Assembly: GCA_950097015.1 (NCBI GenBank)
Contig: CATNEN010000033.1
Span: 2,976,001 to 3,040,000 of the forward strand
Reading direction: 5' to 3'
From: Macrostomum hystrix
Lineage: Eukaryota > Animalia > Platyhelminthes
Length of the DNA stretch: 64,000 nucleotides
Shown here piece by piece: positions 1 to 48,260 of this stretch. The notes under the pieces were generated by a model that ran no database searches, was not told where the DNA came from, and saw only the letters and a program-made list of their open reading frames with translations. Position numbers and translations under genes: made by a program. Positions within the stretch are counted from its first letter, which is position 1, and the number at the start of each line of letters is the position of its first letter.

Positions 1-419
1 CGATCTTCGCGCTGACAGCAAGTGGCTTGCAGACGCTGAGGGTGGAGATGACCTCCTGGGACAATCTGAGCTACTTCTGCGAGCACCCGAACTTCACTGT
101 GCAGAGCGGTCTCACGAACTACACCATGACAGTGTCTCCGTTCCTCAGTGACCGCTGCAGTGTCAACAATGACGCCCTGCTGTACCACTCCGGCATGCAG
201 TTCTCCACCATCGATGTCGACAATGACGCAGTTGGCGGGCAGGCCTGCGCCAGCGTGCGGGGCGGGGGCGGCTGGTGGTACCGCAGCTGCATGATGCCAA
301 ATCCCACTGGAATCTACTCACATGAGTACATTTACTTCAGGAGCAACATGTTCTGGAAACTGCAGTCTGGTGATGTGCCAATGAGGCAGATAAGGCTGCT
401 GCTGCGCATAGTTCTGTGA
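1..419 (+). CDS. Fibrinogen C-terminal domain (FReD) protein, 3' part; 5' end truncated by the window
   Basis: Frame is open from position 3 (IFALTASGLQTLRVEMTSWDN...). It contains FReD hallmarks HSGMQFSTIDVDND, CA...GGGGWWYRSC and NPTGIY, and stops at 417-419. Confidence 0.9.
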   Translation, partial: IFALTASGLQTLRVEMTSWDNLSYFCEHPNFTVQSGLTNYTMTVSPFLSDRCSVNNDALLYHSGMQFSTIDVDNDAVGGQACASVRGGGGWWYRSCMMPNPTGIYSHEYIYFRSNMFWKLQSGDVPMRQIRLLLRIVL

Positions 420-1367
420 CGTCAGTTCAAATTCCTACTTTGCAACAATAGTACAGGGACAGTAAAACTGCGCATTTTCTCTCTTACACAGCAATGACAG
501 TTTTCAGAGTAGTAAAGCTACTTGGCATAAAACAGCGGCCAAAACCTTTGCTAGGGAATGCATTTTTCTTAAAAAATAATTTGTTGTCTAATTGCTGCTC
601 TGTCCCAGGCCGTCTGTGTGCACAAAATTAATGAGCATTAATGAGACTTTAGGTATTTCTTTTTTCCGCCACCTCCTTCGCGTTCTCTATTTTCCTCTCA
701 CTCTTCTCTGTGTCACTATGGAAACCAACTGTTTTCCCTGTCTTAGAGTGTTTGTCAACTTCACCGACAGCAAGCCTGCTTTTTCGGCTAATGAAGAATA
801 CATTGATACTCAATACTCAATAGACTACTCGCAGTAGCAAGCACAGAAAATTGGCGACAAAGTTCGATGGCATCCTCTGTCAACCAGTCAATGTGAGTAA
901 GTGTTCCGATATATACTGGGCTAACAATCTATCTGCCCTCTAATCCTTTTTACTTCCTGCCTATTTCCCAAACTTTATATTCAATGTGGATAAACTCTAT
1001 CATCGACAAATGACAAATGAAACGACAAATAAACGCGCAGAGGTGGCAAAAAAGTATGCGGCATGGAGAATCTTATCACCTGCACAGGATCAGGCAGTCT
1101 GCTTCTGAGCACTTTTATTCAGCAGCGCACAGGTGGTCTCAGTTGCTAGGGAGCGAGTTGCACTAGCATTCCGAACATTTCAGTGCCTGAGCACGGCACA
1201 GGTTGGAGATGCGAGTCAGTTAAAAGCGGTTAAATAATGACCTGACTAAGTAAATTCGCTGAGAGCCGTACATCGAAAAGGGTAAAGTCATAGAGGACAA
1301 ATGTGCTAAACTTTCATTAATAATACATACAAAAGTTTCTCCAATGCCAGGGCACTAAAACTAAAAC

Positions 1368-1585
1368 ACTCTCTCCCTCTCTCTTGCTATTGGCTGGCGA
1401 GCCACCCTCTCTCCTTTCACTCTCTCCCTCTCTCTTGCTATTGGCTGGCGAGCCACCCTCTCTCCTTTCACTCTCTCCCTCTCTCTTGCTATTGGCTGGC
1501 GAGCCACCCTCTCTCCTTTCACTCTCTCCCTCTCTCTCTTGCTATTGGCTGGCGAGCCACCCTCTCCCCTTTCACTCTCTCCCAA
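1368..1585. repeat. 51-bp minisatellite, about 4 copies
   Basis: Unit ctcttgctattggctggcgagccaccctctctcctttcactctctccctct recurs at 1381, 1432, 1483 and 1536. Confidence 0.9.
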
Positions 1586-1719
1586 TGCACATTCCGACTA
1601 GTTCGCGCTTGCTTATCTTATTCACACGTGAGTCGCTAACAATTACACCAATACAAATGGTAAATTTGAAAAGCTCATTCTTAGCCTATTTACGACACGA
1701 CGAAATCCGCAGACGAAAC

Positions 1720-2060
1720 TACCCACCACCCCATAGATTGCACCCACCACCCATAGATTTCACCCACCACCCCATAGATTGCACCCACCACCCATAGATT
1801 TCACCCACCACCCCATAGATTGCACCCACCACCCCATAGATTGCACCCAACACCCCATGGATTGCATCTACCACCCCATGGATTGCATCTACCACCCCAT
1901 GGATTGCACCACCACCCCATAGATAGCACCCAACACCCCATGGATTGCATCTACCACCCCATGGATTGCATCTACCACCCCATGGATTGCATCTACCACC
2001 CCATGGATTGCATCTACCACCCCATGGATTGCATCTACCACCCCATGGATTGCACCCAAA
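1720..2060. repeat. 21-bp minisatellite, about 16 copies, with a variant gradient
   Basis: acccaccaccccatagattgc grades into atctaccaccccatggattgc along the array. Confidence 0.9.
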
Positions 2061-2806
2061 AAATTGCACCACTCCAATAAAACTGGCCAACTCGGACAGC
2101 CATGCATTTTTATCTCCAATCCATCAAAGCGCCTGATGACAGTTTAAACATGAATGCCATGCAGCACATCCAGCTCATACTTACTCGAGAAACTGTCCAG
2201 AGCACCCTGGCACAAGCCATGTTGAAAAAGCATGGACCTGGCCCTGGCCGCAGAAAAAGAACTTTTAAAAAGTTTGCGGAGGGCCAAAGCTCTCATACAC
2301 TCTTTCCTGCGATCAGAAAGTGCAGATTCAGGCGCTAGTGGTGGCTGAGCTTCCGCCAAAGTGTCCCATTTCTGTGACACCCCAGTTTGAGATGGTCCCA
2401 TTGTGAGTTGCAGTACGGATCAATGATAAAACTGGCTAGAAAACAAGCCACGCACAGTGATTTATTTACGTAAAAGCACTTTCCGTTAGTTGATGATTCA
2501 AGCCAATAAGAATGTACTTTAAAAATGCTGCGAGAAATATATTTAACCTGCGTTCAGCCAAATTGACACGTGTGCTGTCATGTGTCAATCATGGGATCAA
2601 TGATGTTTCTTCTGCTCAGAAGATTAAGCTTCGAGCTTCGGGACAAAAATGCTATATTTTTGTAGTTACATTTTCTTGCAATTTGAATAATTTTGAATCG
2701 ATCCAGCGAGTAGTAGTTTTATTTCACTGATAAAAGTCAGATTCCACATAATTTTACGAAATTGACGTAACAAATATTTAAGTTTTATATTTAGTAGCGA
2801 CACTGG

Positions 2807-3360
2807 GACACATGACAGAGTGACACATGACAGAGTGACACATGACAGAGTGACACATGACAGAGTGACACATGACAGAGTGACACATGACAGAGTGACA
2901 CATGGCAGAGTGACACATGACAGAGTGACCCATGACAGAGTGACACATGGCAGAGTGACACATGACAGGGTGACACATGGCAGAGTGACCCATGACAGAG
3001 TGACACATGGCAGAGTGACACATGACAGAGTGACACATGACAGAGTGACACATGACAGAGTGACACATGACAGAGTGACACATGGCAGAGTGACACATGA
3101 CAGAGTGACACATGGCAGAGTGACACATGACAGGGTGACACATGACAGAGTGACACATGACAGAGTGACACATGACAGAGTGACACATGGCAGAGTGACC
3201 CATGGCAGAGTGACACATGGCAGAGTGACACATGACAGAGTGACACATGGCAGAGTGACACATGACAGAGTGACACATGGCAGAGTGACACATGACAGAG
3301 TGACACATGACAGATTGACACATCGCAGAGTGACACATCGCAGAGTGACACATGACACAT
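2807..3360. repeat. 15-bp minisatellite, about 37 copies
   Basis: Unit gacacatg(a/g)cagagt. It explains the repetitive ORFs at 2666-3416. Confidence 0.95.
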
Positions 3361-3449
3361 TAGCGAGAAATATTCTAGACTTTTCTAGCAATACAGGAGA
3401 AACTAATTATTATTAAGAAAATTCTGATGAGAAATGGGATTGTGACACA

Positions 3450-3524
3450 GGGTGCCATCCTGTGTGATACACGGAGTGACATCCTGTGTGATACACGGAG
3501 TGACATCCTGTGTGGCACACGGAG
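3450..3524. repeat. 24-bp repeat, 3 copies
   Basis: catcctgtgtgatacacggagtga x3, just 3' of the GPCR stop. Confidence 0.8.
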
Positions 3525-3631
3525 TATTGCAGGCAGCGGAGGAAATGAAAAATAATGTTTAGTCTGTTCTAGACACGAGGGACAGGTTAATGAGGCTCGA
3601 ATCCCGTGGAAAGACACCCGTCAGATGCAAG

Positions 3632-4807
3632 TCAGAGCGAGCACCTCTTGGAGTACAGGCCCCTGAGCTCCGAGCGGAACTTCGGGTTGAACAGCGCATA
3701 GACAGCGAAATTCAGAGACGAGTTCAAGTAGTACAGCCGGTGCAGCGGCGAGTCGCTGATGACGCCGAAGTTGATGAGGATGCCGGGCAGGAGGCTGAGG
3801 TAGAACAGCACGGAGGCACCGAACAGCATCAGGGCCAGGCGCATCGGGAACCAGCCGCCACCAACTGGGGTGCCGATGCGGCGCTCCTCAGCGCTGTCGC
3901 CGGCTGCCGGACAGTCCGAGTCCTCGTCCACCGCCTGATGGCACTCGACGCTGAACTGCACCAGCTGGCCGCGCTGATGACCGTTGGAAGCGGCCGCTTC
4001 AATGGATTCAGCCGCCTCCGCCGCTTCTGCCAGCTCCGCCACTGGCGTGGTGGCTCCCGCTGGCGACTGCGATGGAGCCGCTCCGGTGCTGCTGCCGACG
4101 GTGCCACGAGGCCTGCTCCGCCGCTGAGTCGTTAGGCTGTTCAGCGTCTGTCGTGTGTGCTTCCGCCTGTGTGACCTGCGCCGCTCCATGGCGGCCACGA
4201 AGGACAAAATCCGGGCGTACAGGCCAGCCACCAGCACAATGGAGCAGCTGCCCAGAGCTCCGTAGAACACCAGCAGGTAGGCCTCCAGGCGAGTTTTGAT
4301 CTCGCAGTCGTCTTCAATGACGTAGTGAGTGACAACGTTGCCAGTTTCCAGAGCGGCCACCGCGGCACCGCTGAGAAGAAGGGCGGCGACGGTGCGCCTG
4401 AAGGACAGGCCGTCCTGCCGCGCCTTCACTACGCACAGAAACCTGTCGACAGCAATCAGCACAAGCACGCAGCCTTCCAGCTCGAAGGCCGCCTGCCGAG
4501 ATGACAGAATGACGGTGCCCAAGAAGTGCCACCGAAGTCGGCCGCCCGTGGCGTACTCGGCGTAGACCCGGTAGCAGTCAAGCGGCAGGATCAGGCCGGA
4601 GATGGCCAGGTCCAAGCAGCTGAGAAACAGCACCAGAAAGCGAAGGCTTCTCTCCCGGCTGGAGCGGAACACCAGCATCACGTGCGCGTTGCCAATGACG
4701 CCGATGACGCCAAGGACGGCGTAGGAGGCCAGCGAGGCGTGGGCGGCCCCGGCCGAGCTGAGCACAGAGTGCTCAGTGCAGTTCACATCAGCGAATGTCG
4801 TTGCCAT
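3632..4807 (-). CDS. Intronless orphan rhodopsin-like (class A) GPCR, 391 aa
   Basis: Seven hydrophobic segments with GN (TM1), LSCLDL (TM2), AVDRF (TM3), LYARI (TM5), a long low-complexity ICL3, and NSSLNFAVYALFNPKFR (TM7/helix 8). N-glycosylation site NCT in the N-terminus. Confidence 0.9.
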   Translation of the reverse strand: MATTFADVNCTEHSVLSSAGAAHASLASYAVLGVIGVIGNAHVMLVFRSSRERSLRFLVLFLSCLDLAISGLILPLDCYRVYAEYATGGRLRWHFLGTVILSSRQAAFELEGCVLVLIAVDRFLCVVKARQDGLSFRRTVAALLLSGAAVAALETGNVVTHYVIEDDCEIKTRLEAYLLVFYGALGSCSIVLVAGLYARILSFVAAMERRRSHRRKHTRQTLNSLTTQRRSRPRGTVGSSTGAAPSQSPAGATTPVAELAEAAEAAESIEAAASNGHQRGQLVQFSVECHQAVDEDSDCPAAGDSAEERRIGTPVGGGWFPMRLALMLFGASVLFYLSLLPGILINFGVISDSPLHRLYYLNSSLNFAVYALFNPKFRSELRGLYSKRCSL

Positions 4808-5013
4808 GCGGGCGTCTGGATTGTGTTTCCTGGCGTCTGTCGCATTGGTGGCTCAGCAACTATCGGCTTGGGGATTTGGGGACTGCGGCTGAACCTCTGA
4901 CTGCCCGCACCCGCCCATTCACAGGCTTCGCTTCATAGCGACCATTTTCTGATTGGCTGTTAGATTTGTCAAATTGCCTCCTCCAGCTGCTCAGCCACCA
5001 GCTAAAACGCAAA

Positions 5014-5279
<266 letters not shown>

Positions 5280-5632
5280 AGTTGGCTCTGATAACTGAAC
5301 TACAATTTTTAAGCTTCAATAAACTTTTCTGCAAAAGTTCCAAACGGATAGTCGATGGCCAGCAACTATCGATCTAAGTGATAGCTCAGAGGCAGGCAGG
5401 GCGGAGGGAGGATGGGACCGAGGAAATGCGCTGCCCCCCACCAGCTTCCTGGTGTGAGGAGGCGCGCAGACAGCGGCTGGCCAGGAAACGATTCGAAAAG
5501 CCAAATCGGCAAATTCTATCGATGCAGGCAGCACGGAGTAAGGCAGCCTGCACTGCTAATGTGTCCGTCACGCCAGTCAATACTTTCTGATTCACGTGTG
5601 ATTTTCCTGTGCGCGAAATGGCCTGCTTTAAA

Positions 5633-6399
5633 GACTCATGTGTTCTCTGTCATAAACTCATGTGTTCTCAGTCATAGACTCATGTGTTCTCAGTCATAGA
5701 CTCATGTGTTCTCAGTCATAGACTCATGTGTTCTCAGTCATAGACTCATGCGTTCTCAGTCATAGACTCATGTGTTGTCAGTCATAGACTCATGTGTTCT
5801 CAGTCATAAACTCATGTGTTCTCAGTCATAGACTCATGTGTTCTCAGTCATAAACTCATGTGTTCTCAGTCATAAACTCATGTGTTCTCAGTCATAGACT
5901 CATGTGTTCTCAGTCATAAACTCATGTGTTCTCAGTCATAGACTCATGTGTTCTCAGTGATAGACTCATGTGTTGTCAGTCATAGACTCATGCGTTCTCA
6001 GTCATAGACTCATGTGTTGTCAGTCATAGACTCATGTGTTCTCAGTCATAGACTCATGTGTTCTCAGTCATAGACTCATGCGTTCTCAGTCATAGACTCA
6101 TGTGTTGTCAGTCATAGACTCATGTGTTCTCAGTCATAAACTCATGTGTTCTCAGTCATAGACTCATGTGTTCTCAGTCATAAACTCATGTGTTCTCAGT
6201 CATAGACTCATGTGTTCTCAGTCATAAACTCATGTGTTCTCAGTCATAGACTCATGTGTTCTCAGTCATAGACTCATGTGTTCTCAGTCATAGACTCATG
6301 CGTTCTCAGTCATAGACTCATGTGTTGTCAGTCATAGACTCATGTGTTCTCAGTCATAAACTCATGTGTTCTCAGTCATAAACTCATGTGTTCTCAGTC
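5633..6399. repeat. 22-bp minisatellite, about 35 copies
   Basis: Unit (g/a)actcatgtgttctcagtcata with a 22-bp period. Confidence 0.95.
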
Positions 6400-7658
6400 A
6401 AATGCTGAAATAAAGCCTGAAAGTTAAGCAATTTTATTCGATAAGCTCTACTTTGAGTAGGCCAATGAGAGATGGTCTGTGTGGTTAGATCTTTTTGATA
6501 TTGGCTTGCTTTTATTATCTGATACATTTTGCTCAGAATGATTTCTTAGAAGCCAGTGAGTTTTCGAAGCAGAGCTTGGGCAACTTGTATCCGACTGGCA
6601 TACTGACTCGCTACTCCATGGCGACTACTCAAGATGGCTAAGAAAACACGAACTGCAAGGGGCGTGCCAAACACGAATTGGATTTCAAGCCAGTCACGTT
6701 TTCAAGACCCGATACACATACAGTGCCCGCCTGGCGGCAGAGACCGGTGGAAACAAAAAACACTGTCAAATTATCGAGCTTTAGCTTTATTAGAGACTTC
6801 AAGTTTCAGCAAGTCTCGATAAGATTTTTAGCAACCGATTTGCTCTGATCAGCTCATGAATTTAGACTCGCGAATTCTCAATCACTAATTCTCTGTTGTT
6901 ACTCCTCTCTCCAGGGCCAACAAGTAGAGGCCTGCTGAGCATGGGGGGCCTGGGCAGCGATGCTCCCATGGGATATGCTAACCGTATTAGCATTCACCAG
7001 ACCCACACAACCAGCAAATGGGCTTCTTCTACCAAGCTTCTTCGACGATGCCACTTTTGCTTTCAATTTTTCCGTTTTTGAATTGTGAATAGAAAAATTC
7101 TGCCTTATTGATCCGTGCTCAGCGTCTCATCTACCGGAAGAAGTACTTCACGCACATCGGCTCTGGCGAGTTTCACCAAGGTAGATTTCAGGTCTCTTTG
7201 AGAGAGGCAGAGAAGTCAGCACGGCCTGAGTACATTACCAACCCTCACAGGGCTGACATTGCGAGCGTGGGCTTATCGATCCGCGTCGTGCAGCAGCTCT
7301 GCGGAAGGATGAGGGGGGCCGGGGTTAGGGATGAGTATCCCGGGAGGCTGGGGAGGCGCCCCAGAGTACACAGGGAGGCTGAGTTCTCACTGGGACGGGC
7401 TCACACCAATCTTAGTAACTGAGCGGCGAGAGGCTGAGAGGAGGGGTGAGAAGGGGAAGCAGGCGGGCTCAGCGGCTCAAACGCGCAAACACAAAGTGCC
7501 TCCCTCCTGTAGAGTTCCCCTTCCATTCCAGAATCCCGCTAGGCCGGTTCTGTTTCGCTGCATTTCTCCCGGCGAAAGTGAGAGCCATCCTGTCAGGCGG
7601 GACTCCGGAATTATCTCAGCCAGGGTACAGCAGGACTCCGGGAGCATCCTGGCCAGCG

Positions 7659-10565
7659 ATGACGACAGCAAGCGGAGCGGAGGAGGCGGACGACCTGGAA
7701 TTCGACCAGACTGGCTTCGATCCGTTTTCCAGCGCCTTTGGTGAAGCGGTCGATCTCGCACCCGACGACGAGAATCCGTTCGACGCTGGGGGTGACTTCG
7801 CTGCCGATTTATCTGCAAAGCCAACGTCGAAAACAGCACAGCAAATCCTTGACGAAGCTGAAGCGACGCCGACTCGTCGGGACCGCGGCAGAGGCGTGCT
7901 TCGTCAGGACACACTCTCTGGCAACAATCCGTTCCGGGTCGCCTCCACTGAGGCCGAGGACCCCTTTCTTGCGGCTGCTGCATCATCGCAACTCGTAGCA
8001 GAGGCTGCGGCAGAGGTCGCGGCAGCTGCCGCGGCGGCAGCAGAGTCTGAGGACGAGGCTGCCGAGTTGGAAGCGAATGGCTTCGACCCGCTGTCCACCA
8101 TCTACCCGCAGAGCGACAACAGCGGCGACGAGAGCGTGGCGGCTGCTTCGGTCAGTGTCAAAATCAGGAGAGCTGGCAAGGAGGGGGCGGAGGCGGCGAT
8201 CGCCGTGCCGCACATTCAAGGGCCGCCGTCGCGAGCAGAGGCAAAAGCTGCAGCTGCGGCAGCTGCAGCCGCATTCACTCAATCCGTTAATGAAGACGAC
8301 GATGACGATCGATTCAATCCGTTCAACATCTGCGCCGGCTCAGCCGCTCCATCAACCGCTTCAGCCGCAGAAGATAACATCTGGGGCGAAGCCTCATGCG
8401 GCGGTGGCAGCATCTGCGGTGGTGCAGGCAGCAGCGGCGGAGCAGCCTTCGATGTCGACTGGGCCAGACCGGCATTGGGCGACGCGGACGAGTCTGGCAG
8501 GCGGAGCCGACTTCGCTCCGAGACGCCGCCGATGCCACCCTTTGAGCCCTTCCAACCGGCCTGCATGGGGGACAGCTGGAAGCTGTTCATCCGCATGCCA
8601 GAGACCAAGAAGAAGATAGGAAAGCAGATGAGCAAGTTCACGTCGGACCGCTGGTGGAAGGACATCTTGCTGCGCCTCGTGTGGGAACAGGAGCGACCGA
8701 CTCTGAAGCTGTACAACTTGGAGGATCTGGAGAGTCCGTACCGCTGCATCCGCCTGGAGCCTTTTTTTCAACTGAGCCACGCCAAGCTTCAGCAGTACGA
8801 CAAGTATGGCAAGCTGCACATCTTCAAGGTAAACCTCATCACCTACAAGGAGATGGTTGGCGTGCGCACTGAGAAGTGGTCGCTTAAGACTATCCAGAAC
8901 ATGCTGGCAAAGCCGAAGACCACCGACGTTCTGGACCACATGCCCGTGCGCCAGGAGATCGTGAAGTTCGGCAGCATCAACCAGCACGACATCCGATCGC
9001 TGATGTGGCAGATAGAGGACCTCATGATGCGCACCGCCGTGGCCAGAGACAGGAACAAGGCGCCCGTTGACTACGTCAAAGAGGAGGTCTGTGCCTACGT
9101 TCAGGACGAGTACGAGGCCTCCGTCAACCAGCAGGGCCACATTTTGCGGCAGAAGTCACGCACTCGAGTATTTTTCACAGCCTTCGCCACCGGAATGCCC
9201 TACGTTGAGCTTGGCCTCAACGATAAGTGGCGCTACGGCAACGAGGTGGTGAAGCGCCAGGACATCATTCCCATGCTGCACGATGACTGGATCGACATGT
9301 ACGAGCCGCAGTTCCACTCCGTGGTGGACATGGCGCGCTACGAATGCTCGCACATGATCTGCTTCCATCCACTGGATGCCTGTCGCTTCGAGCTGATGCG
9401 ATTCCGCGTGGCGCTGCGGGAGAACCAGGAGCTGCCAGTGCAGCTCAAGTGCGTTTTCTCCATCGATCAGGACCGTGTGAACATCCGCTGCGACGTCATG
9501 GTGCCGGGATTCTTCAGCAGCACCACCCGGTGCCACGAGGTGCCAGCGGAGGACATCGAGATCCGCATCCCGATCCCAGAAGACTGGGTGTACTTCTTCA
9601 GGCAGGAGGGCAAGTTTAAGTACAACTCGGTGCACTCGGCGCTGCGCAAGCCGGGCCGCATCAAGGGCATCGAGCGGATCACGCAGATGGCGCAGGGATT
9701 TTTCCCGCCCTCCATCATGGAGGCAAACATCGGCGTTGCCAAATATGAACACCTGTACCGAGCCATTGTGTGGCGAATCGCCCGACTGCCGGAGAAACAT
9801 CACGGTGAGACACTTCGGCTCAGTTAAAAACAGGTTTGATACATAGAATAAGAGTAAAAACAAAGAGCTTTCCAAACAACCACCCCAACAGGCGCTTACA
9901 AGTCGCACATGTTTGCCTGTCGACTGCAGCTGGGTCCGCACGACACCGTGCCGAGCTGGGAGGCCCTGGAGCCCAACGCCCATGTCGAGTTCCGCATGCC
10001 GGGCAGCACGGTCTCCGGCTGCACCGTGCGCAGCATTGGCCTGGACCACACCGGCCAGGCTGGCAAGTTCGTGCAGTACACAGCCAGGTACAGCTACAGT
10101 TGGGCCATCTGCTACGAGTTCGGCGAGAGAAAGAAGCCACCAGTGACCAGCGTGCTGGACGAACCGTCCAAGCAGAAACCGAAACAGCAGCAGGAGCAGC
10201 AACAGTCGCAGCCTCCTCCTCCTCCGCCTCCGCCACCAAAGCCGGTGTTCACCGACTTGGAGATTCCGGACGACCCGTTCGCCTGTGCGCCGTCAACGGG
10301 CGGAGACGCCCCCGTCTCGACCAGCAGAATTAGCTCCGCCTTCGACCCGCTGGCCGCAGCGTTTGGATTCGGCTCGGCCTCGGCCGCGTCCCCTCCTCCG
10401 CGACCGCAACCGCCACCCTCGCAGCAGCAGCCGATGAGCATATTCCAGTCGGCACTGCCCGGTGCTCTCAGTGAGCTGCTGGGTCTTCAAGTCGGCGGCA
10501 CAGCCCCTGAAGCAACCAAGGAGGCAGCAAATGCCGATTCAGAGGTCCCGGAGTCGCAGCAATAA
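7659..10565 (+). CDS. stnB: Stonin / Stoned-B-like endocytic adaptor; exons 7659-9804 and 9892-10565 (frame is open from 7446, so the true start may be upstream)
   Basis: Acidic N-terminus with DPF/NPF motifs (FDPF, ENPF, NNPF, EDPF, FNPF), stonin-homology region (WKLFIRMPETKKK...DRWWK) and mu-homology domain (KEEVCAYVQDEY, VELGLND, FHPLDACRFELMRFR, AKYEHLYRAIVWRI). The 87-bp phase-1 intron 9805-9891 (GTGAGA...CAACAG) restores ...EKHHG|AYKSHMFACRL...VEFRMPGSTVSGCTVRS. Confidence 0.9.
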
Positions 10566-12108
10566 TTCAAGTTAGCTGATTCCTCCCAAAGCGCACTTGT
10601 CTTGTTAATTTGGTTGCCAGGTACAAGGCGTTCCAGCGCAATCTAATTTAGTTCAAATATCGACCACTGACTGAGTCAGACAGTTACTGACAGCATACTC
10701 GTCCGTGCCAGTTAGTCATAGCATCAGTCAGACAAAACCCGCCTGTCCGAATGTTAAAAGTGCAACCAGGTGACTCCAGTATTACATCTACTACGATTCC
10801 TGGATCCAATTTAACTGCTTTAGACAGCTGGCAAGCCAAATTAAGGGTAATCTGATAAAAATGTTATATAGTTAATAGTGTGAAGTACAATAGTGAAGTA
10901 CAATTCAAGCTTATGTCATGCAGCCACCCCAGACACCTCTCCACATGACTGTCCATCTGTTTGAAATCAGCCATGCCAGTGCATCAAGCAAACGTTGAGT
11001 GTCTATCATTTAAAAACTGACAATTCATTATGTTTGAGCACGTGATCACAAGGGCTTACTCAAATAGTTTTTTCTTAGAATACTGCTAGCGATTTTCCTA
11101 TGCGAGCTGATTGTTCGATTCGCACTCGCGCTATTGATGTTGTCCCGCTGACTTGCTCGCAGCACAATTTTATTATTTGCAAATTTCCTATTCAATTAGC
11201 TGAGTGAATCGCGTGTGCAGTTGTGCTTTTTCCTAACCCTTATATATCAAACATTTAGTAGCGATGCTAAAATATACTAAAAAACACATTAGTTACCTTC
11301 ACAGCATTCAATACACTGTTTGAATTGACTGAATTTGGTTTTTTAAATTAACAATAATTAATGCATTTGCAACAGAAACTACTTGCAGTAACAATAAATG
11401 TGCACTCACACGCACACCCACATCCATACAAAAACACTTTCGCATACACACACACTTTAACAAACACAATGCGTATATGGTTAACTATATTTAGTATTAG
11501 TGCATAAGTGGAGACTGCATGAAGGTGAAAGCCGTAAAAGCAACGGGATCTATATAGTTGATGCTATAAAGCAAAGCACAATGGAATACTTGAGTAGCTG
11601 TTCATGCGGGTGCTGCAGTTATAGAACTTCTGAAGGTGAGAGTATTGTATGGCCACTGTACAGAACAACAGTGCAGGCCTTCACTCACCTTCTGCGTCAG
11701 GGCAAGCCCACACAAACAAGCGCAGCTAACGTGTATGTGTCAAAGCTCTGCTAGATCACCTACCACAGATAGCGAATGCTGAGTGCGAATTACGGAAGGG
11801 TAATTTACCGATTACATGTACACGTATACTAGCGTCTAGCTGGGACCATAACAATTAGTTGAAATATATAAACTTCAATTGTAAATTTTGTAAACTAAAT
11901 CTATTTGCAATATGCGCATGAAACAAGACTCTATAGTTGACTGCAATATTTGGGGTAAATCTGGGAGGAAACGAAAATTATTGTTGACAATAGTTTCGTT
12001 GACGAAATAAAAAAATAAAATTGTTGGCTCAATATATTTCGTAATTAGCAACTCGATAAAATGTTCTGTCTTAGTCATTCCGACTGCAGATTCCTGTGAT
12101 CTGGAAAC

Positions 12109-12310
12109 TCAGCCCCTGGGACATTTGCAACGCTGATCCTCTGGCACGTCCTTCATCGCCTGCTGAACGTGCTGACCGCAGCCTGAAAATCCCAATTCAA
12201 ACCGAAGGTGTATTAGTTATTGTGTTGCACAAAGCAGTGATAAGTTTGATTGGCCCTTTACCTTTCCAAGTCATCTTGCCGCACTTGTCACATTTGACTT
12301 TCATGCACAT
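12109..12310 (-). CDS. 40-aa Cys/His-rich microprotein, copy 1; exons 12310-12262 and 12182-12109
   Basis: Spliced product MCMKVKCDKCGKMTWKG|CGQHVQQAMKDVPEDQRCKCPRG*. The 79-bp intron 12183-12261 has G|GTAAAG and TTTTCAG| ends. A paralog with the same intron position lies 1.4-2.6 kb away. Confidence 0.88.
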
Positions 12311-13503
12311 GGTTGCAATTCGATTTTTCGAAGCTGAGAAATTCGAATAGAACATTAAGTGTAACGAACAGTTAAAAAACCAATGCATTCGAGGTCGTGA
12401 ATGTCAGTTCAAGTAAAGACTGTTAAAATGTTTTATTAATTATTCCATGTATGTATTTTATACTTTTTAGTCGATATAATAATGCTCTGTTTACACCATT
12501 TATAAATAAATATAATATATTGGCATTAAATTTAGTTTTATTTTGTTTAAATTTAAATAAAATTTCCGGAACCAAATACTAGAGAAATGCTTAGTTTGTA
12601 TCTGTCTTAATGACGACGATACAGTCAGGTTCGCGCAGTGGCCATTGATGTATGTAGAAATTATTTCTTACACTTTTTAAGGCCATTATGTGATCGTATA
12701 TCTTGCAGTTTAGACGTACAAAGCAAACTCATGTGTTTTTGTACATCCTAACCTGCAGATAATTAGCGGAATATTGATAATACATCTTTACCATTTCCTT
12801 CACTCCAAATAGCTTAACAGCTCAAATTAAGTAAAAAACTATTTTCAATATTTCTGAATAAACATGTGTATTTAAAGCCAACTGACTTGTGTATTTTATA
12901 TTTAAACATAAGTTGGGAGACCAAAAGTAAGCTTTTAGAGGTCATAGCATGTTCAAATATATAGTAATAATTGGGGTAGGCAGCAGGCATGATTAAAACA
13001 ATGCAGTGCATTAAAACAAACACCCTAAATACATAAAATGTTTGGTCTTTCAAAGAAATTTTTATGGCAACAAATACCATGTCAAGTATAAAAATAGGCT
13101 AACATAAAACTAGCACTATTAAAATTCAATTACATTCACTTTATTATGTGCTTTTATTGGTGTCAAGAAAATGTTGTTGGTATATAAATAGAAATGTTTT
13201 TTATTAAAGACTCACTTGGAAATTATATTATTACACTGGGGCTTTTAGATTTGCTTTTTAGAAAGCTACTAGTCTCTAGGTCAATGTTTTTACAACTAAA
13301 TAAAATCATTTTGTATTAAAAAAGTTAGTCAGACACATCTATTCTTAGCTACTGCAAAATGTTTTTGGCTCAAAATATAGGTTTTTAGATATTTACAGAA
13401 AATGATTTGGTAACAGCAAAAGTTCTAAGTAGACATTCAATTATGATCGTTTTTGGTCTCAATTTTACTGTTTGGAATCTTGTAAAAAACAACCTTGATG
13501 TGT

Positions 13504-14919
13504 TTATTTATCACACTTGCAACGCTGGTCTTCTGGTACATTCTTCATCACTTGTTCCACATGCTTGCCACAGCCTGAAATACAAAAAGTAAGCATATTA
13601 AAGGAATGTTCTCTATATTTTACTTATTCTAAGGCAGAGCTTATTCCCACGGTCCTGTGCTGATAATTTAAATTTTATCCACATGGATCCATGCCAATAA
13701 TTTTCTGCTTATCCACACGGCAGCTTGTATGAATAGGTCTAAAACTCTTTATATAAATATGCCGTGCCATTAATTTCAATTTTATCCACATGGTTCTGTT
13801 TTTTGAAACAAGGCCCTTTTGGGTTTGAACGTTTTGTTAAACCCTCAAGCCAATAGATTGACAAAGTTGCCAGTGTGTTACAAATGTGTTCTACATTTCG
13901 ACCTACACATTCATTAACCGACGTTAATGTCATCCTTTTTAATTATTGTAATAACAATTTACTAAATATTTTGTCATCATTACGTGTTTTTATTCAAATT
14001 GTATTGACTTAAAAAGTAAGAAGTCTATCAAAGAAAATTATACGAGTCAACCAGCAGAATTCTAGTCAGCACCAAACTTGTCACACATATTATCACGCAT
14101 CATTGTTATTATTTTACACTATGCATTGATAGTGTACACTATACACTATACTCTGAAGCAAAAGCCTTATGCTCAGAGAAGAATAGGTAGGGACTTGAAA
14201 GTAGACATATTCATACAAGCTGCCATGTGGATAAGCAGAAAATTATCGGCACGGATCCGTGTGGATAAAATTGAAATTATCAGCATGGGACTGTGGGATT
14301 GGGAATAAGCACTTCCTTAATCTAATAGGATAGTTATTTATTTTAAATCATGTAAACATGGCTAGTTCCTATTTTTATACATAATCAAATTTTCATTTAC
14401 ATATACTTACATCATCTCACCTGCAATATTTTTTCTCAAATTCTTAGACAGGTACATTTTTATAGTCCAGGCACTGCCCAGAATCAAATCATCATCAAAT
14501 TTTGTCATAAAATGTGTCATTTCTTTTAAAACAAGAGTAGGCTATTTAGCTATCCAGATTTTTAGATAATTACCATTATTCTGATGTCATCTAGCAACAT
14601 AGATGAACGTTACTGATTCAGGATATATATAGGTTATCTAAATGATTTGACCGAATAGCATTAGAAAGGATTGTTATTGCAGTCTAGGTAAAATGAAGAT
14701 TTGTTTCTAAAATAAATCAAAATACTAAATCCAAAGACTACATAGACCCCCTGTTATTGCAGTTGTGTACGCAAAAACACTTTTACATTTAATAAAAACT
14801 TTGCTGAATTTAAAGAAAACGTGTAGAGGACCATGAGCACAATAGGCTCAAATTGCTCAAATTATCATACCTTTCCAAGTAGTCTTTCCACATTTGTCAC
14901 ACTTCACCGGCATACACAT
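13504..14919 (-). CDS. 39-aa Cys/His-rich microprotein, copy 2; exons 14919-14871 and 13574-13504
   Basis: Spliced product MCMPVKCDKCGKTTWKG|CGKHVEQVMKNVPEDQRCKCDK*. Phase-1 intron 13575-14870 (G|GTATGA...ATTTCAG|). 31 of 37 aligned residues are identical to copy 1. Confidence 0.88.
13632..14317. mobile_element. Non-autonomous TIR DNA transposon (MITE family A), about 686 bp, in the intron of microprotein copy 2
   Basis: Imperfect TIRs of about 110 bp (aggcagagcttattccc... / ...gggaataagcacttcct). Flanks tattcta(a)/taatcta(a) give a 7-8-bp TSD with one mismatch. A second copy is at 38518-39189. No ORF. Confidence 0.85.
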
Positions 14920-16253
14920 GATTGCTTTATTGTTTATCCTTTAGAAGATCAGCTCAGAGTGTTGCTCAGGTAGCCTAGTCTAGTGATGTAGCTTAGACCA
15001 ATATTCGAACACACGTACTGACAACCGTGGCCGTTCAAAACGTGCTTTGAAAAGTTTGAATGTACAATTAAATCAATCTTAAATTTACGCCTTTGATAAT
15101 AAAATTACAAAGTTAAACAAAACAACAGTAGCCTATTATTAACAGGATAGTAGGAATGGTCATAATTGATTTTTCAAAGTGAATGAGTATTTTTCAAAGT
15201 CATAGTCGCGTATTAAATATTATCGTGTTTTACATTGAGATTTTTCTCAGCATTTCTCTTCAATCTAACTGATAAAAAGTTAAATCCAACAGTTAACTCT
15301 TCATTATAGCAATTATAGTATCATAATGTGTGCGCGTCGGACATATTGGTCCGAAAGACAAAATATCACTACTCTAAACATAAAATTAAGCTTTCGGTTC
15401 TCATGGTGCGTCGAAATGACTAAAGAAAAAAGGGAAGGCAAAAGGGTTAAATTAGCCATAATTAGGTCAAATTTAATTCCTGATGAACAATTATGAATAC
15501 AAATGCAAAAAATGTCTGTATAATTTATACATATAATTCACACGGCTGCATATACACTTATATTGTTTCCGTAGTTCTTCCTGGTGAATGGAACTTTACA
15601 TTTAATTTTCTTAGCCTGTTATGCCTTGTAGCAATTAATTAAAATTTATCGTGAGGAATATATATTTAATCGAAAAGCAAGTTGTTACAAAGTCATAACA
15701 TGGACTAAAACAGTGATGACAATTATAGCACGCAGGCTTTATAGACGAAATTGATTCAAATCGTTGTTCGCCTAATATATACATTTGAAGCAAGTTACAA
15801 GCAATAAAATGCTGATTGTGCAAAGTCAATGCGGGATTCTGTATCCGCAGGAAGAGAAGCCACGCGAATTTCAGTGCGACGTGCAGCTACATCTATTTTA
15901 TTGGTATCTGTAAATGCTGGATGTGATCCGGAAGACTGGAGAGAGAATCGACCAGCAGGTCTCACCGCCTCCCAGCAACAAAGCAGCAGCAACAAAACCC
16001 GCAATTGTTTCACCCCCAAAGCCTGCCGCATTGCGCCACCAATAATGTTTTTGCATTCATTTTTACAAATTCCCTCTGCCGGAAAACAGGCCGTTGTCAT
16101 AGCCAAATACTCCCTGCATACTGCATGCGGCTGCAGCGACTTGCGTTACAGCTCAAAAGATTCGACCCTCAGCTGTATGCCTTCAATGCATTGAGCGTGG
16201 TAAATGGGAGTTAAAATTTGCAGTATACAAAAGAGTTGGACCATAAACATGTT

Positions 16254-46855: not shown

Positions 46856-46864
46856 CACTGATGA

Positions 46865-48260
46865 CCCCAGCTGAATCTGACAGGTGCTGCAATGACTACC
46901 CTATAGCTGAATCTGTCAGGTGTTGCAATGACTACCCCATAGCTGAGTCTGTCAGGTGCTGCAATGACTACCCCATAGCTGAGTCTGTCAGGTGCTGCAA
47001 TGACTACCCCATAGCTGAGTCTGTCAGGTGTTGCAATGACTACCCCATAGCTGAATCTGTCAGGTGCTGCAATGACTACCCCATAGCTGAGTCTGTCAGG
47101 TGTTGCAATGACTACCCCATAGCTGAGTCTGTCAGGTGCTGCAATGACTACCCCATAGCTGAATCTGTCAGGTGCTGCAATGACTACCCCATAGCTGAGT
47201 CTGTCAGGTGTTGCAATGACTACCCCATAGCTGAGTCTGTCAGGTGTTGCAATGACTACCCCATAGCTGAATCTGTCAGGTGCTGCAATGACTACCCCAT
47301 AGCTGAGTCTGTCAGGTGTTGCGATGACTACCCCATAGCTGAATCTGTCAGGTGCTGCAATGACTACCCCATAGCTGAGTCTGTCAGGTGTTGCAATGAC
47401 TACCCCATAGCTGAATCTGTCAGGTGCTGCAATGACTACCCCATAGCTGAATCTGTCAGGTGCTGCAATGACTACCCCATAGCTGAGTCTGTCAGGTGCT
47501 GCAATGACTACCCTATAGCTGAATCTGTCAGGTGTTGCAATGACTACCCCATAGCTGAGTCTGTCAGGTGCTGCAATGACTACCCCATAGCTGAATCTGT
47601 CAGGTGCTGCAATGACTACCCCATAGCTGAGTCTGTCAGGTGTTGCAATGACTACCCCATAGCTGAGTCTGTCAGGTGTTGCAATGACTACCCCATAGCT
47701 GAATCTGTCAGGTGTTGCAATGACTACCCCACAGCTGAGTCTGTCAGGTGTTGCGATGACTACCCCATAGCTGAGTCTGTCAGGTGTTGCAATGACTACC
47801 CCATAGCTGAATCTGTCAGGTGTTGCAATGACTACCCCATAGCTGAATCTGTCAGGTGCTGCAATGACTACCCCATAGCTGAATCTGTCAGGTGCTGCAA
47901 TGACTACCCCATAGCTGAATCTGTCAGGTGCTGCAATGACTACCCCATAGCTGAATCTGTCAGGTGCTGCAATGACTACCCCATAGCTGAGTCTGTCAGG
48001 TGTTGCAATGACTACCCCATAGCTGAGTCTGTCAGGTGTTGCAATGACTACCCCATAGCTGAGTCTGTCAGGTGCTGCAATGACTACCCCATAGCTGAAT
48101 CTGTCAGGTGCTGCAATGACTACCCCATAGCTGAGTCTGTCAGGTGTTGCAATGACTACCCCATAGCTGAATCTGTCAGGTGCTGCAATGACTACCCCAT
48201 AGCTGAATCTGTCAGGTGCTGCAATGACTACCCCATAGCTGAGTCTGTCACGTGCTGCAA
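46865..48260. repeat. 36-bp minisatellite, 39 copies, open in one plus-strand frame as (AESVRCCNDYPI)n
   Basis: Unit gctga(a/g)tctgtcaggtg(c/t)tgcaatgactaccccata; ORF 46861-48276. Confidence 0.96.

What the first reader, a model, noticed from the sequence alone, without database searches (positions are those of the whole stretch)
12109..14919. Hidden tandem pair of spliced ~40-aa Cys/His microprotein genes under purifying selection
Seen in sequence: two minus-strand two-exon genes absent from the ORF track, MCMKVKCDKCGKMTWKG|CGQHVQQAMKDVPEDQRCKCPRG and MCMPVKCDKCGKTTWKG|CGKHVEQVMKNVPEDQRCKCDK. Both have a 49-nt first coding exon and a phase-1 intron inside the same Gly codon. Over 37 aligned codons I count 15 synonymous-only differences and 6 amino-acid changes, while the introns and flanks do not align, which is the signature of an old duplication kept under selection. 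All six Cys plus His are invariant (C2, C7xxC10, W15-x-G-C18-G-x-H21, C35-x-C37), suggesting a compact Zn- or other metal-binding fold, with no signal peptide. From memory, uncharacterised proteins with a similar MC...CxxCGKxTWxGCGxH...C-x-C pattern occur in fungi, plants and actinobacteria. If so, this is a deeply conserved or horizontally acquired microprotein family that annotation pipelines miss in animals. Function (metal buffering, redox, stress response) is inference.
Basis: partly seen in the sequence, partly recalled or inferred. Interest (0 to 1): 0.88.

Follow-up and report, generated by a model that had tools for sequence, protein, structure and literature searches.

The report
Two hidden Cys-rich microprotein genes
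Two unannotated, spliced and expressed genes in a Macrostomum flatworm encode 39-40-residue metal-binding-type peptides of a large, unnamed family shared with fungi, a few other animals and actinobacteria, where its gene neighbours and fusions point to thiol/persulfide (reactive sulfur) chemistry.

Summary
Two minus-strand, two-exon genes lie exactly where stated. Gene A is 12310-12262 + 12182-12109 (40 aa). Gene B is 14919-14871 + 13574-13504 (39 aa). Both have a 49-nt first coding exon and a phase-1 GT..AG intron in Gly17.

- **Expression:** assembled contigs of four public runs (two labelled 'RNA?', two of unrecorded kind) carry both splice junctions exactly.
- **Selection:** synonymous sites are saturated, while pN is 0.08. 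Only the coding exons align between the two copies.
- **Host:** a Macrostomum flatworm.
- **Family:** large (822 clusters at 50% identity) and wholly uncharacterised, with no Pfam or NCBIfam model, no solved structure and no paper found. Members occur in fungi, Actinomycetota, leech and bdelloid rotifers. The leech and rotifer genes share the same intron position, which argues for old, vertical descent in animals.
- **Metal ligands:** seven ligand positions are conserved. The last one alternates between Cys37 and His38, which marks a metal ligand rather than a disulfide partner.
- **New functional lead:** 58 of 80 actinobacterial loci sit beside CsoR/CstR-type sulfane-sulfur detoxification genes. 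These are rhodanese, persulfide-dioxygenase-type MBL-rhodanese, a CoA-disulfide-reductase-type enzyme and TauE. Natural fusions to thioredoxin, rhodanese and an AhpD-like domain also exist.

The function in the flatworm is inferred, not shown. I did not test it.

The parts
12262..12310 (-). Gene A, coding exon 1 (49 nt: Met1 to the first base of Gly17)
   Evidence: Translation and splice check. Spliced contigs in X1, X5 and X6.
12183..12261 (-). Gene A intron, 79 nt, GT..AG, phase 1
   Evidence: The joint skipping 79 nt is seen in three runs, and no contig covers the intron.
12109..12182 (-). Gene A, coding exon 2 including the TGA stop (Gly17 to Gly40)
11800..12378 (-). Gene A transcript as far as the laid contigs show. 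The 3' UTR runs past 11800, and the 5' end reaches at least 12378.
   Evidence: X5 record 7 (579 nt), X1 record 1 and X6 record 14.
12353..12355 (-). In-frame upstream ATG of gene A in a weak context. It would add 15 residues if used.
   Evidence: It lies within RNA contigs that reach 12357-12378.
14871..14919 (-). Gene B, coding exon 1 (49 nt). An in-frame stop lies upstream, so Met-Cys is the first possible start.
13575..14870 (-). Gene B intron, 1296 nt, GT..AG, phase 1
   Evidence: The joint skipping 1296 nt is seen in all four runs.
13630..14319 (.). MITE-like repeat inside the gene B intron, bounded by terminal inverted repeats of about 97-110 nt. It accounts for much of the size difference between the two introns.
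   Evidence: Inverted repeats I1 and I7. Many contigs lie on it at 90-95% identity, which indicates a multi-copy element.
13504..13574 (-). Gene B, coding exon 2 including the TAA stop (Gly17 to Lys39)
13078..15014 (-). Gene B transcript as far as the laid contigs show. AATAAA/ATTAAA signals lie at 13205, 13158 and 13145.
   Evidence: X5 record 8, X6 record 15 and X2 record 5. Signal positions.

Best explanation
These are two real, independently transcribed and correctly spliced protein-coding genes of a Macrostomum flatworm. They are an old tandem duplicate pair kept by purifying selection. Each encodes a 39-40-residue member of a widespread, unnamed microprotein family with the signature M-C-x4-C-x2-C-G-K-x-T-W-x-G-C-G-x-H-x13-C-x-C (or C-x2-H).

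Shown:
- the gene structure, expression and selection;
- family membership;
- a shared animal intron;
- the absence of any curated family or solved structure.

Inferred, with good support: the peptide folds around metal ion(s), most likely zinc, held by seven conserved ligands. These are Cys2, Cys7, Cys10, Cys18, His21, Cys35 and Cys37/His38. A C7-x2-C10 knuckle sits on a beta-hairpin, and C18-x2-H21 sits at the start of a short helix.

Inferred, with moderate support: the module works in thiol/persulfide redox chemistry. It could be a thioredoxin- and rhodanese-linked partner, for example a sulfane-sulfur acceptor or carrier, or a reactive zinc-thiolate centre that reactive sulfur species attack and thioredoxin resets. 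In Actinomycetota the gene is embedded in CsoR/CstR-type sulfane-sulfur detoxification clusters. In several organisms the domain is fused to thioredoxin, rhodanese or an AhpD-like domain.

Speculative: in the flatworm the two copies would act as small cytosolic redox or sulfide-stress proteins, since they have no signal peptide.

My confidence that the genes and the family assignment are right is about 0.95. For metal binding it is about 0.75, and for the sulfur/thiol-redox role about 0.45. The figure below is for the whole statement.
For: - **Gene structure and selection:**
- **Expression:** spliced contigs in four runs from two studies.
- **Family size:** 822 clusters at E<=1e-3, with 78% identity to the best hit. 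The profile search gave 611 hits.
- **Conserved positions:** C2, C7, C10, G17, C18, G19, H21 and C35 are invariant. Among 328 members with the strict spacing, 304 have CxC and 19 have CxxH. Among the 80 actinobacterial loci, 52 have CxxH and 28 have CxC. His can replace Cys at a metal site but not in a disulfide.
- **Structure:** the AlphaFold model has pLDDT 88.7, with a hairpin at 3-6/13-16 and a helix at 22-25. The same fold appears in AlphaFold DB family members at TM 0.8-0.95.
- **Animal intron:** Helobdella and Adineta vaga genes have the same 49-nt exon 1 and phase-1 intron in Gly17.
- **Tree:** trees with animals, or with all eukaryotes, held as one clade are not rejected and score better than the free quick search. 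p-AU is 0.90 and 0.92.
- **Bacterial context, single cases:** in freshwater Actinomycetes the order is CsoR-like, rhodanese, CoADR-rhodanese, the small gene, thioredoxin. In Corynebacterium it is the small gene, CoADR-rhodanese, CsoR-like. In Rhodococcus it is the small gene, MMPL, YgaP-TM, DUF302, TauE, CsoR-like, MBL-rhodanese.
- **Bacterial context, census:** within 5 kb across 80 species loci, 52 have a CoADR-like gene, 43 a rhodanese, 37 a CsoR-like gene, 32 an MBL-rhodanese, 28 TauE and 14 a thioredoxin. In all, 58 of 80 have at least one, mostly within 400 bp.
- **Unbiased check:** a Pfam scan of the nearest neighbour on each side puts Rhodanese first (22/79 and 12/80). HMA or P-type ATPase domains appear in only 2.
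- **Experimental anchor:** the CsoR-PDO/rhodanese-TauE-rhodanese set is an experimentally shown sulfane-sulfur circuit in Streptomyces coelicolor (PMC7533328).
- **Fusions:** many fusions to thioredoxin, including a complete one in P0100 and a complete one after a short intron in L011. There is also a fusion to a rhodanese domain with a C-x2-G-x-R-S loop (P0124) and one to a CMD/AhpD-like domain (P0091).
Against: - No experiment on any member was found.
- Metal binding, metal identity and stoichiometry are inferred from conservation only. I could not read the model's coordinates to check the ligand geometry.
- Seven ligands do not make two ordinary tetrahedral sites. That would need a bridging Cys or the N-terminal amine.
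- The gene-context evidence comes from Actinomycetota and transfers to an animal only by homology over 38 residues.
- The 80 loci are the best-scoring of at least 597 and share ancestry, so they are not 80 independent observations.
- 22 of the 80 loci show none of the six sulfur-cluster gene types.
- My gene calling for the neighbour scan was crude.
- CsoR-family repressors also sense copper, so part of the association could reflect metal stress.
- Nothing near the flatworm genes relates to sulfur metabolism. The neighbours are stonin and brahma.
- Translation of the flatworm peptides is not shown, and the start codon of gene A is ambiguous.
Confidence: 0.55

Rival explanations
1. The peptide is a metallothionein-like metal buffer or chaperone. 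It simply sequesters or hands on Zn, Cu(I) or Cd, and the link to CsoR-family repressors reflects metal stress rather than sulfur stress.
For: - The peptide is small and cytosolic, with seven Cys/His ligands.
- The Helobdella homologue carries a His/Gly/Cys-rich C-terminal tail and gives a weak Metallothi_Euk2 hit.
- The CsoR family includes copper sensors. This is from my own knowledge, for example the mycobacterial metallothionein MymT under RicR.
- The Rhodococcus copy sits on a mobile element with CadD.
- 2 of 79 upstream neighbours are HMA/P-type ATPases.
Against: - Neighbours are overwhelmingly rhodanese, MBL-rhodanese, CoADR-type and TauE genes, not CopA/CopZ-type genes.
- The fusions are to thioredoxin, rhodanese and AhpD-like domains, not to metal transporters.
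- Cys content is only 15%. There is an invariant Trp, rigid spacing and a confidently predicted fold, unlike typical metallothioneins.
- No metallothionein Pfam model reaches significance.
Confidence: 0.2
2. The peptide is a purely structural zinc-finger-like adaptor that binds a protein or nucleic-acid partner. The sulfur-cluster context is a peculiarity of Actinomycetota, and the animal copies do something unrelated.
For: - The knuckle-plus-helix arrangement (C7xxC10 ... C18xxH21) resembles the treble-clef logic of many zinc fingers. This is inference from the secondary structure.
- 22 of 80 bacterial loci lack the sulfur genes.
- The Gordonia humi copy sits among purine genes.
- The flatworm neighbours are unrelated.
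Against: - The domain is only 38 residues and nearly all of its conserved positions are ligands or glycines, which leaves little surface for a specific partner.
- Independent fusions in eukaryotes and bacteria all involve thiol-redox or sulfurtransferase domains.
- No structural analogue exists among solved zinc fingers.
Confidence: 0.15
3. The flatworm genes were acquired recently by horizontal transfer from a fungus or an actinobacterium, rather than inherited within animals.
For: - The highest identities are to fungal proteins: Tilletiaria 78% and Thamnocephalis 79-82%.
- The known animal distribution is patchy: flatworm, leech and bdelloid rotifers. The rotifers are known for foreign genes, from my own knowledge.
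- Other first-stage notes list candidate transfers in this genome. These are untested.
Against: - The intron position and phase are identical in flatworm, leech and rotifer. The two fungi examined have their introns elsewhere: Stereum in phase 0 one base earlier, Linnemannia after T13 and M20.
- The two flatworm copies are saturated at synonymous sites, so the duplication itself is old.
- A single animal clade is not rejected and scores better than the free search.
- The region's composition and splice signals are like the host's AT-rich non-coding DNA.
- With 38 columns, the identity differences amount to two or three residues.
- Microproteins are routinely left unannotated, so apparent absence from other animals carries little weight.
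Confidence: 0.08
4. The ORFs are not translated. The transcripts are non-coding, or the ORFs are chance features.
For: There is no proteomic or ribosome-profiling evidence. The ORFs are very short.
Against: - pN is 0.08 against saturated synonymous sites.
- Only the coding parts are conserved between the copies.
- There are hundreds of homologues across kingdoms with invariant ligand positions.
- Both have a good Kozak context and gene B has an in-frame upstream stop.
Confidence: 0.02

Closest known systems
Uncharacterised homologues in public databases, for example Helobdella robusta XP_009031894.1, Adineta vaga UJR10629.1, Ustilago maydis UMAG_12125, Tilletiaria anomala XP_013245026.1, and Rhodococcus, Gordonia and Corynebacterium hypothetical proteins
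   Same: They share the signature and spacing, 55-80% identity over 38 residues and the same predicted fold. The animal members share the intron position.
   Different: None has a name, a curated family, a structure or a paper. Many carry C-terminal tails or fused domains that the flatworm peptides lack.
CstR/CsoR-like sulfane-sulfur circuits: Staphylococcus aureus cst operon, and Streptomyces coelicolor ScCsoR-PDO-TauE-Rhod (PMC7533328)
   Same: The bacterial homologues sit inside clusters with the same parts list: a CsoR-family repressor, an MBL(PDO)-rhodanese fusion, rhodanese, TauE and a CoADR-rhodanese.
   Different: The small Cys-rich gene is not among the parts of the S. coelicolor circuit that the paper's passages name (SCO0618-0621). 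Its role there is unknown. The flatworm genes are not in any such cluster.
Metallothioneins, including mycobacterial MymT (recalled from my own knowledge)
   Same: They are small, cytosolic and Cys-rich. In bacteria they can be under a CsoR-family repressor.
   Different: There is no sequence or profile match. The Cys density is lower, the ligand spacing is fixed, the Trp and Gly residues are invariant and the fold is confidently predicted. The gene context is sulfur-related rather than copper-related.
Treble-clef, zinc-ribbon and C2H2 zinc fingers
   Same: A CxxC knuckle sits on a beta-hairpin, followed by ligands at the start of a helix. The short 'KCxxCGK' stretch matches C2H2 fingers locally.
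   Different: The only whole-sequence PDB hits at E<0.01 (2i13_A, 1mey_C) are multi-finger C2H2 proteins whose repeated knuckles add up. No single stretch is significant. There is no Pfam zinc-finger hit. Foldseek's best PDB match has E 2.1 and TM 0.34, and VIA-align finds no chain with Z>=2. The domain has seven ligands rather than four.
Thioredoxin-linked zinc-thiolate redox switches such as Hsp33 or RsrA (recalled; an analogy only)
   Same: The proposed logic is the same: a Cys-coordinated zinc centre that reacts with oxidants and is reset by thioredoxin. Thioredoxin adjacency and fusions support a thioredoxin link.
   Different: There is no homology, and no effector domain is attached in the 40-residue forms. 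The reaction itself is untested.

Membership tests
Unnamed Cys6His (C5H2) microprotein family: M-C-x4-C-x2-C-x7-C-x2-H-x13-C-x-C/x2-H | Significant sequence similarity over the whole domain | tested here: met
   phmmer with gene B gave 14 hits at E<=1e-10 and 822 at E<=1e-3. The best is 78% identical over residues 2-38.
Unnamed Cys6His (C5H2) microprotein family: M-C-x4-C-x2-C-x7-C-x2-H-x13-C-x-C/x2-H | All conserved ligand and glycine positions present with exact spacing | tested here: met
   Both peptides have C2, C7, C10, T14, W15, G17, C18, G19, H21, C35 and C37.
Unnamed Cys6His (C5H2) microprotein family: M-C-x4-C-x2-C-x7-C-x2-H-x13-C-x-C/x2-H | Domain begins at the protein's N-terminus (Met-Cys) | tested here: met
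   Of 328 members, 291 have Met before Cys2 and 233 have the motif at residue 1. Gene B cannot start earlier. Gene A could start at 12355.
Unnamed Cys6His (C5H2) microprotein family: M-C-x4-C-x2-C-x7-C-x2-H-x13-C-x-C/x2-H | Same predicted fold as other members | tested here: met
   Thirty AlphaFold DB cluster representatives match at TM 0.75-0.95 by query and rmsd 0.6-1.4 A. All are unnamed or 'uncharacterized' except two automatic labels (60S ribosomal protein L44, transposase) on longer entries that hold the domain.
Animal lineage of that family | Phase-1 intron after 49 coding nucleotides, inside Gly17 | tested here: met
   It is present in both flatworm genes, in Helobdella robusta and in Adineta vaga. 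It is absent at that exact place in Stereum and Linnemannia.
C2H2 zinc finger | C-x2-4-C-x12-H-x3-5-H with a Pfam zf-C2H2 match | tested here: not met
   There is no Pfam hit at E<=10. The PDB hits cover only the CxxC knuckle, with domain i-E-values of 95 to over 20000. There is no second His at the required spacing.
Metallothionein | Match to a metallothionein family model. Very high Cys content in CC, CxC or CxxC clusters without conserved aromatic residues. | tested here: not met
   There is no significant Pfam match. One family member hits Metallothi_Euk2 at E 0.18. The peptides have 6 Cys in 40 residues and an invariant Trp15.
Metal-binding protein (general) | Binds a metal ion through the conserved Cys/His | not testable with these tools
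   The support is indirect: the Cys37/His38 exchange and the confident compact model.
Component of a CsoR/CstR-type sulfane-sulfur response (functional system, Actinomycetota) | Gene adjacent to, or co-oriented with, a CsoR-family repressor and persulfide-handling enzymes | tested here: met
   This is met for the bacterial homologues: 58/80 loci, mostly within 400 bp. It does not apply to the flatworm genes, whose neighbours are stonin and brahma.
Component of a CsoR/CstR-type sulfane-sulfur response (functional system, Actinomycetota) | Induced by sulfide or polysulfide and repressed by the CsoR/CstR-type regulator | not testable with these tools
   This needs expression and DNA-binding experiments. 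It has been shown only for the neighbouring genes in S. coelicolor (PMC7533328).
Cys N-degron substrates (Met-Cys proteins oxidised by ADO/PCO) | Cys at position 2, exposed after Met removal and then oxidised and arginylated | tested here: inconclusive
   Met-Cys is present. It is equally invariant in bacteria, which lack that pathway, so Cys2 is more simply read as a ligand. Oxidation cannot be tested here.

The most novel reading that the evidence does not exclude
The family is a previously unrecognised metal-thiolate microprotein with its own fold. It is shared by Actinomycetota and eukaryotes and acts as a dedicated partner of rhodanese, persulfide reductase and thioredoxin in handling sulfane sulfur. 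A few sediment- and film-dwelling animals (flatworm, leech, bdelloid rotifers) have kept it since at least the spiralian ancestor as part of their sulfide or oxidant tolerance. Annotation overlooks it because the product is about 40 residues and the gene is split by an intron.
Probability: 0.3. Interest if true: 0.8.

Novelty: new variant of a known kind. Interest (0 to 1): 0.62.

Why it matters
A 38-residue domain found in at least 597 actinobacterial species genomes, many fungi, other eukaryotes and some animals has no curated family, structure or publication.

Here it gets several things it lacked:
- proof of expression in an animal;
- evidence of long-term selection;
- a shared-intron argument for old animal ancestry;
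- a ligand-swap argument for metal binding;
- a concrete, testable functional context in reactive-sulfur and thioredoxin chemistry.

If that context holds, it adds a missing small component to bacterial sulfide/persulfide detoxification clusters. It would also give a first handle on a conserved eukaryotic microprotein.

The case also shows a practical blind spot. Intron-split genes for peptides under 50 residues escape both eukaryotic annotation pipelines and prokaryote-style gene callers.

Tried and rejected
- **Curated families:** Pfam on both peptides and on 25 family members gave nothing significant. NCBIfam gave nothing.
- **Solved structures:** PDB sequence search gave only local C2H2-knuckle matches. 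Two multi-finger proteins reach E<0.01 only by adding such stretches up. Foldseek against PDB found nothing at E<=0.001. VIA-align against 48,161 chains found no Z>=2.
- **Word-index protein search with gene A:** no candidate. This shows that the collection holds no annotated Macrostomum copy.
- **ESM Atlas:** The homologue P0059 returned only unnamed clusters.
- **Literature:** searches by sequence motif, by locus tag and by topic found no paper on the family.
- **The search for related loci with the mixed alignment A1:** it failed for lack of a conserved stretch. The bacterial alignment A2 worked.
- **Third copy in the window:** none found.
- **Alignment of introns and flanks between the copies:** none found.
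- **Sulfur-related genes near the flatworm pair:** none found.
- **Phylogeny:** 38 columns cannot resolve relationships within eukaryotes or give a direction of transfer between eukaryotes and Actinomycetota.
- **C2H2 zinc finger and metallothionein membership:** considered and rejected, as set out in the membership tests.
- **N-degron reading of the Met-Cys start:** considered and set aside, because bacteria conserve it too.


Full report
**1. What is in the sequence**

On the minus strand, gene A reads ATG at 12310. Its 49 coding bases run to 12262, the intron is 12183-12261 (79 nt, GT..AG), and the second exon is 12182-12109 ending in TGA.

Gene B reads ATG at 14919. Its 49 coding bases run to 14871, the intron is 13575-14870 (1296 nt, GT..AG), and the second exon is 13574-13504 ending in TAA. 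Both introns interrupt the Gly17 codon after its first base.

By Nei-Gojobori counting, synonymous sites are saturated (18.5 differences on 18.2 sites). Non-synonymous divergence is 0.08, with Fisher p about 7e-15.

A sensitive blastn between the two loci aligns only the two coding exons, at 78-79% identity. UTRs, introns and flanks do not align. A tblastn of the window finds no third copy.

Most of the extra length of intron B is a MITE-like element with terminal inverted repeats of about 97-110 nt, at 13630-14319. Many transcriptome contigs lie on it at 90-95% identity, so it is a multi-copy element.

**2. Expression**

I laid the contigs of four public runs on 11800-15200. The two runs of one study are labelled 'RNA?' and the kind of the two of the other study is not on record. 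They gave spliced contigs with the predicted joints.
- The 79-nt skip is seen in X1, X5 and X6.
- The 1296-nt skip is seen in all four runs.
- Both skips have CT..AC ends on the plus strand, which is GT..AG on the minus strand.
- Intron A has no coverage.

The contigs define small mRNAs of about 0.6 kb. Gene A runs from at or below 11800 to at least 12378, and gene B from 13078 to 15014.

Gene B's Met-Cys start is the first possible start, because an in-frame stop lies upstream. Gene A has in-frame ATGs at 12355 (inside the contigs) and 12388 with no stop between. The 12310 ATG has the better context (ACCATG) and matches the family's N-terminus. Translation itself is not shown.

**3. Host and surroundings**

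The window carries large GC-rich exons of four genes:
- a rhodopsin-type receptor (3632-4807, minus strand);
- stonin (7446 to about 10565, plus strand);
- brahma/BRG1 (about 23.4-34.4 kb, minus strand);
- an LDL-receptor-like gene (49571-52117, minus strand).

The brahma exon is 95% identical to Macrostomum lignano BOX15_Mlig016277g2. The next hits, apart from other M. lignano entries (63% and 76%), are about 50-60% identical. The genome is therefore M. lignano or a close congener.

The two microprotein genes sit in the 32-34% GC gap between stonin and brahma. Nothing nearby relates to sulfur or metal metabolism.

**4. The family**

Gene B against 1.84 billion cluster representatives gave 822 hits at E<=1e-3 and 14 at E<=1e-10. 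The best is 78% identical.

Every named member is 'hypothetical' or 'uncharacterized'.
- Fungi: Ustilaginomycetes, Agaricomycetes, Mucoromycota and Zoopagomycota.
- Actinomycetes: Rhodococcus, Gordonia, Corynebacterium, Microbacterium and freshwater MAGs.
- Animals: Helobdella robusta (XP_009031894.1), Adineta vaga (UJR10629.1) and Adineta ricciae.

The best 80 are all Actinomycetota.

No Pfam or NCBIfam model matches, and no solved structure matches by sequence. The word-index search with gene A found no close protein, so the collection holds no annotated Macrostomum copy. Literature searches by motif, locus tag and topic found nothing on the family.

**5. Conserved positions and fold**

In a 25-sequence alignment, C2, C7, C10, G17, C18, G19, H21 and C35 are invariant. 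T14, W15 and C37 are conserved in at least 90%.

Among the 328 members with the strict spacing, the last ligand is C37 in 304 and His38 in 19. Among the 80 actinobacterial genome loci, it is His38 in 52 and C37 in 28. A Cys/His exchange is what a metal ligand allows and a disulfide partner does not. This is the best in-silico argument for metal binding.

AlphaFold with the alignment gives a confident model (pLDDT 88.7). It has a hairpin at 3-6/13-16 carrying the C7xxC10 knuckle, and a short helix that starts right after C18xxH21.

Foldseek against the PDB finds nothing (best E 2.1, TM 0.34). VIA-align against 48,161 chains finds no Z>=2. AlphaFold DB clusters return only family members at TM 0.75-0.95. 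Nearly all are unnamed or 'uncharacterized'; two longer entries carry automatic labels (ribosomal protein L44, transposase). I could not read coordinates, so the pairing of ligands into sites is inference.

Seven ligands suggest one of two arrangements. One is a Cys3His site plus a Cys3 site. The other is two sites sharing a ligand or using the N-terminal amine. Met precedes Cys2 in 291 of 328 members.

**6. Ancestry**

The Helobdella and Adineta vaga genes have the same 49-nt first coding exon and the same phase-1 intron in Gly17 as both flatworm genes. The two fungi examined differ. Stereum has a phase-0 intron one base earlier, and Linnemannia has introns after T13 and M20.

A 75-row tree on 38 columns is poorly resolved. 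It still puts the flatworm copies in a group made mostly of fungi, animals and thioredoxin-fusion sequences, apart from the main actinobacterial group. Constrained trees with animals, or with all eukaryotes, as one clade are not rejected and score better than the quick free search. p-AU is 0.90 and 0.92.

Together with the saturated synonymous sites, this favours old vertical descent in animals, at least back to the common ancestor of flatworms, annelids and rotifers. A recent transfer is less likely. The direction of any exchange between eukaryotes and Actinomycetota is open. Absence from other animals cannot be concluded, because such genes are routinely unannotated.

**7. Functional clues**

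Three unrelated actinobacterial look-ups gave the same picture.
- Freshwater Actinomycetes: CsoR-like repressor, rhodanese, pyridine-nucleotide disulfide reductase with a rhodanese domain, the small gene, thioredoxin.
- Corynebacterium: the small gene, the same reductase type, CsoR-like repressor.
- Rhodococcus: the small gene, MMPL, YgaP-like TM, DUF302, TauE, CsoR-like repressor, MBL-rhodanese. This cluster sits on a Tn7-like element that also carries CadD.

I then searched the 80 species loci with these neighbours as queries. Counts within 5 kb were as follows:

| Neighbour type | Loci (of 80) |
|---|---|
| Reductase type (CoADR-like) | 52 |
| Rhodanese | 43 |
| CsoR-like | 37 |
| MBL-rhodanese | 32 |
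| TauE | 28 |
| Thioredoxin | 14 |
| At least one of the six sulfur-cluster types (these without thioredoxin, plus DUF302) | 58 |

Most of these genes lie within 400 bp of the small gene.

As an unbiased check, I scanned the nearest called gene on each side against Pfam. Rhodanese was the commonest domain on both sides (22/79 and 12/80), followed by Pyr_redox_2, Lactamase_B, MMPL and TauE. HMA or P-type ATPase domains occurred twice.

This parts list is the sulfane-sulfur circuit shown experimentally in Streptomyces coelicolor: ScCsoR, a PDO-rhodanese fusion, TauE and a rhodanese (PMC7533328).

Independently, many metagenomic proteins fuse the domain to thioredoxin.
- P0100 is a complete single-ORF fusion with a WCGPC site.
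- Contig L011, from a 23% GC eukaryote, shows the thioredoxin domain completed after a roughly 25-nt intron.
- P0124 fuses the domain to a rhodanese domain with a C-x2-G-x-R-S loop.
- P0091 fuses it to an AhpD-like CMD domain.

Caveats:
- The 80 loci are related and are the best-scoring ones.
- 22 loci lack these genes.
- The gene calling was crude.
- CsoR-family proteins also sense copper.

**8. Reading**

The most economical account is a small metal-thiolate module that works with rhodanese-type sulfurtransferases, persulfide or disulfide reductases and thioredoxin. It could be a sulfane-sulfur acceptor or carrier, or a reactive zinc-thiolate centre reset by thioredoxin.

A metallothionein-like metal buffer is the main rival. 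The leech homologue's His/Gly/Cys tail speaks for it. The neighbour census and the fusions speak against it.

For the flatworm, the function is carried over by homology only. From my own knowledge, Macrostomum lives in intertidal sand, where sulfide exposure is plausible. That is speculation.

**9. Novelty and verdict**

The genes are real and unannotated. The family exists in databases only as hypothetical proteins, with no curated model, structure or literature. The predicted fold has no solved analogue.

The claim that animals lack annotated members is only partly true.

The functional context found here is new as far as the searched literature shows, and it can be tested directly.

An earlier first-stage note (s1-327252) reports three similar two-exon Cys-rich microprotein genes on another piece of the same genome. 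I could not examine them.

Noticed in passing
window 13630-14319: A MITE-like element with 97-nt (up to about 110-nt) terminal inverted repeats lies inside the gene B intron. Many transcriptome contigs match it at 90-95% identity, so it is a multi-copy and transcribed repeat family.
   Followed up: partly
window 14921-14928: Run X2 (organism A) has an 8-nt deletion immediately upstream of gene B's start codon, plus a T>A change at 14940. This is a 5'-UTR polymorphism that alters the start-codon context.
   Followed up: no
window 12353-12355 and 12386-12388: There are in-frame upstream ATGs before gene A with no intervening stop. The nearer one lies inside the RNA contigs, so a 55-residue N-terminally extended isoform is possible.
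   Followed up: partly
window 1-64000: Composition is sharply two-toned. Very large GC-rich exons (brahma, a 1247-codon open frame at 30617-34360; LDL-receptor-like at 49571-52117; stonin at 7446-9827) reach up to 64% GC. They are separated by stretches of 32-38% GC (12-16 kb and 34-42 kb).
   Followed up: partly
window 46861-48276: A 471-codon ORF on the plus strand gives weak hits to LED_rpt and to retroviral Gag_p12, with no individually significant stretch. It is probably low-complexity or repeat protein sequence.
   Followed up: no
L003, L004, L007 (Rhodococcus-type contigs), 1-10177: The bacterial small gene and its MMPL-DUF302-TauE-CsoR-MBL/rhodanese cluster sit next to TniQ/TniB/Mu-type transposase genes and CadD. 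The same cluster is found in other contexts (L005, L006, L008) and on a Streptomyces plasmid (L093). The cluster appears to be mobile.
   Followed up: partly
L001 3001-3697 (Helobdella robusta): The leech homologue carries a 38-residue His/Gly/Cys-rich C-terminal tail that the flatworm peptides lack. This suggests extra metal-binding capacity.
   Followed up: no
L011 1574-2377: The thioredoxin-fusion gene lies on a 2.4-kb contig of 23% GC with a roughly 25-nt intron, and the contig ends in a short G-rich tandem repeat. It may be a gene-sized chromosome of a ciliate-like eukaryote. The organism was not identified.
   Followed up: partly
L019-L098 (Actinomycetota): Two C-terminal ligand variants exist: C-x-C in 28 loci and C-x-G-H in 52. 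They tend to fall in different parts of the tree, so they may mark subfamilies with different metal sites.
   Followed up: partly
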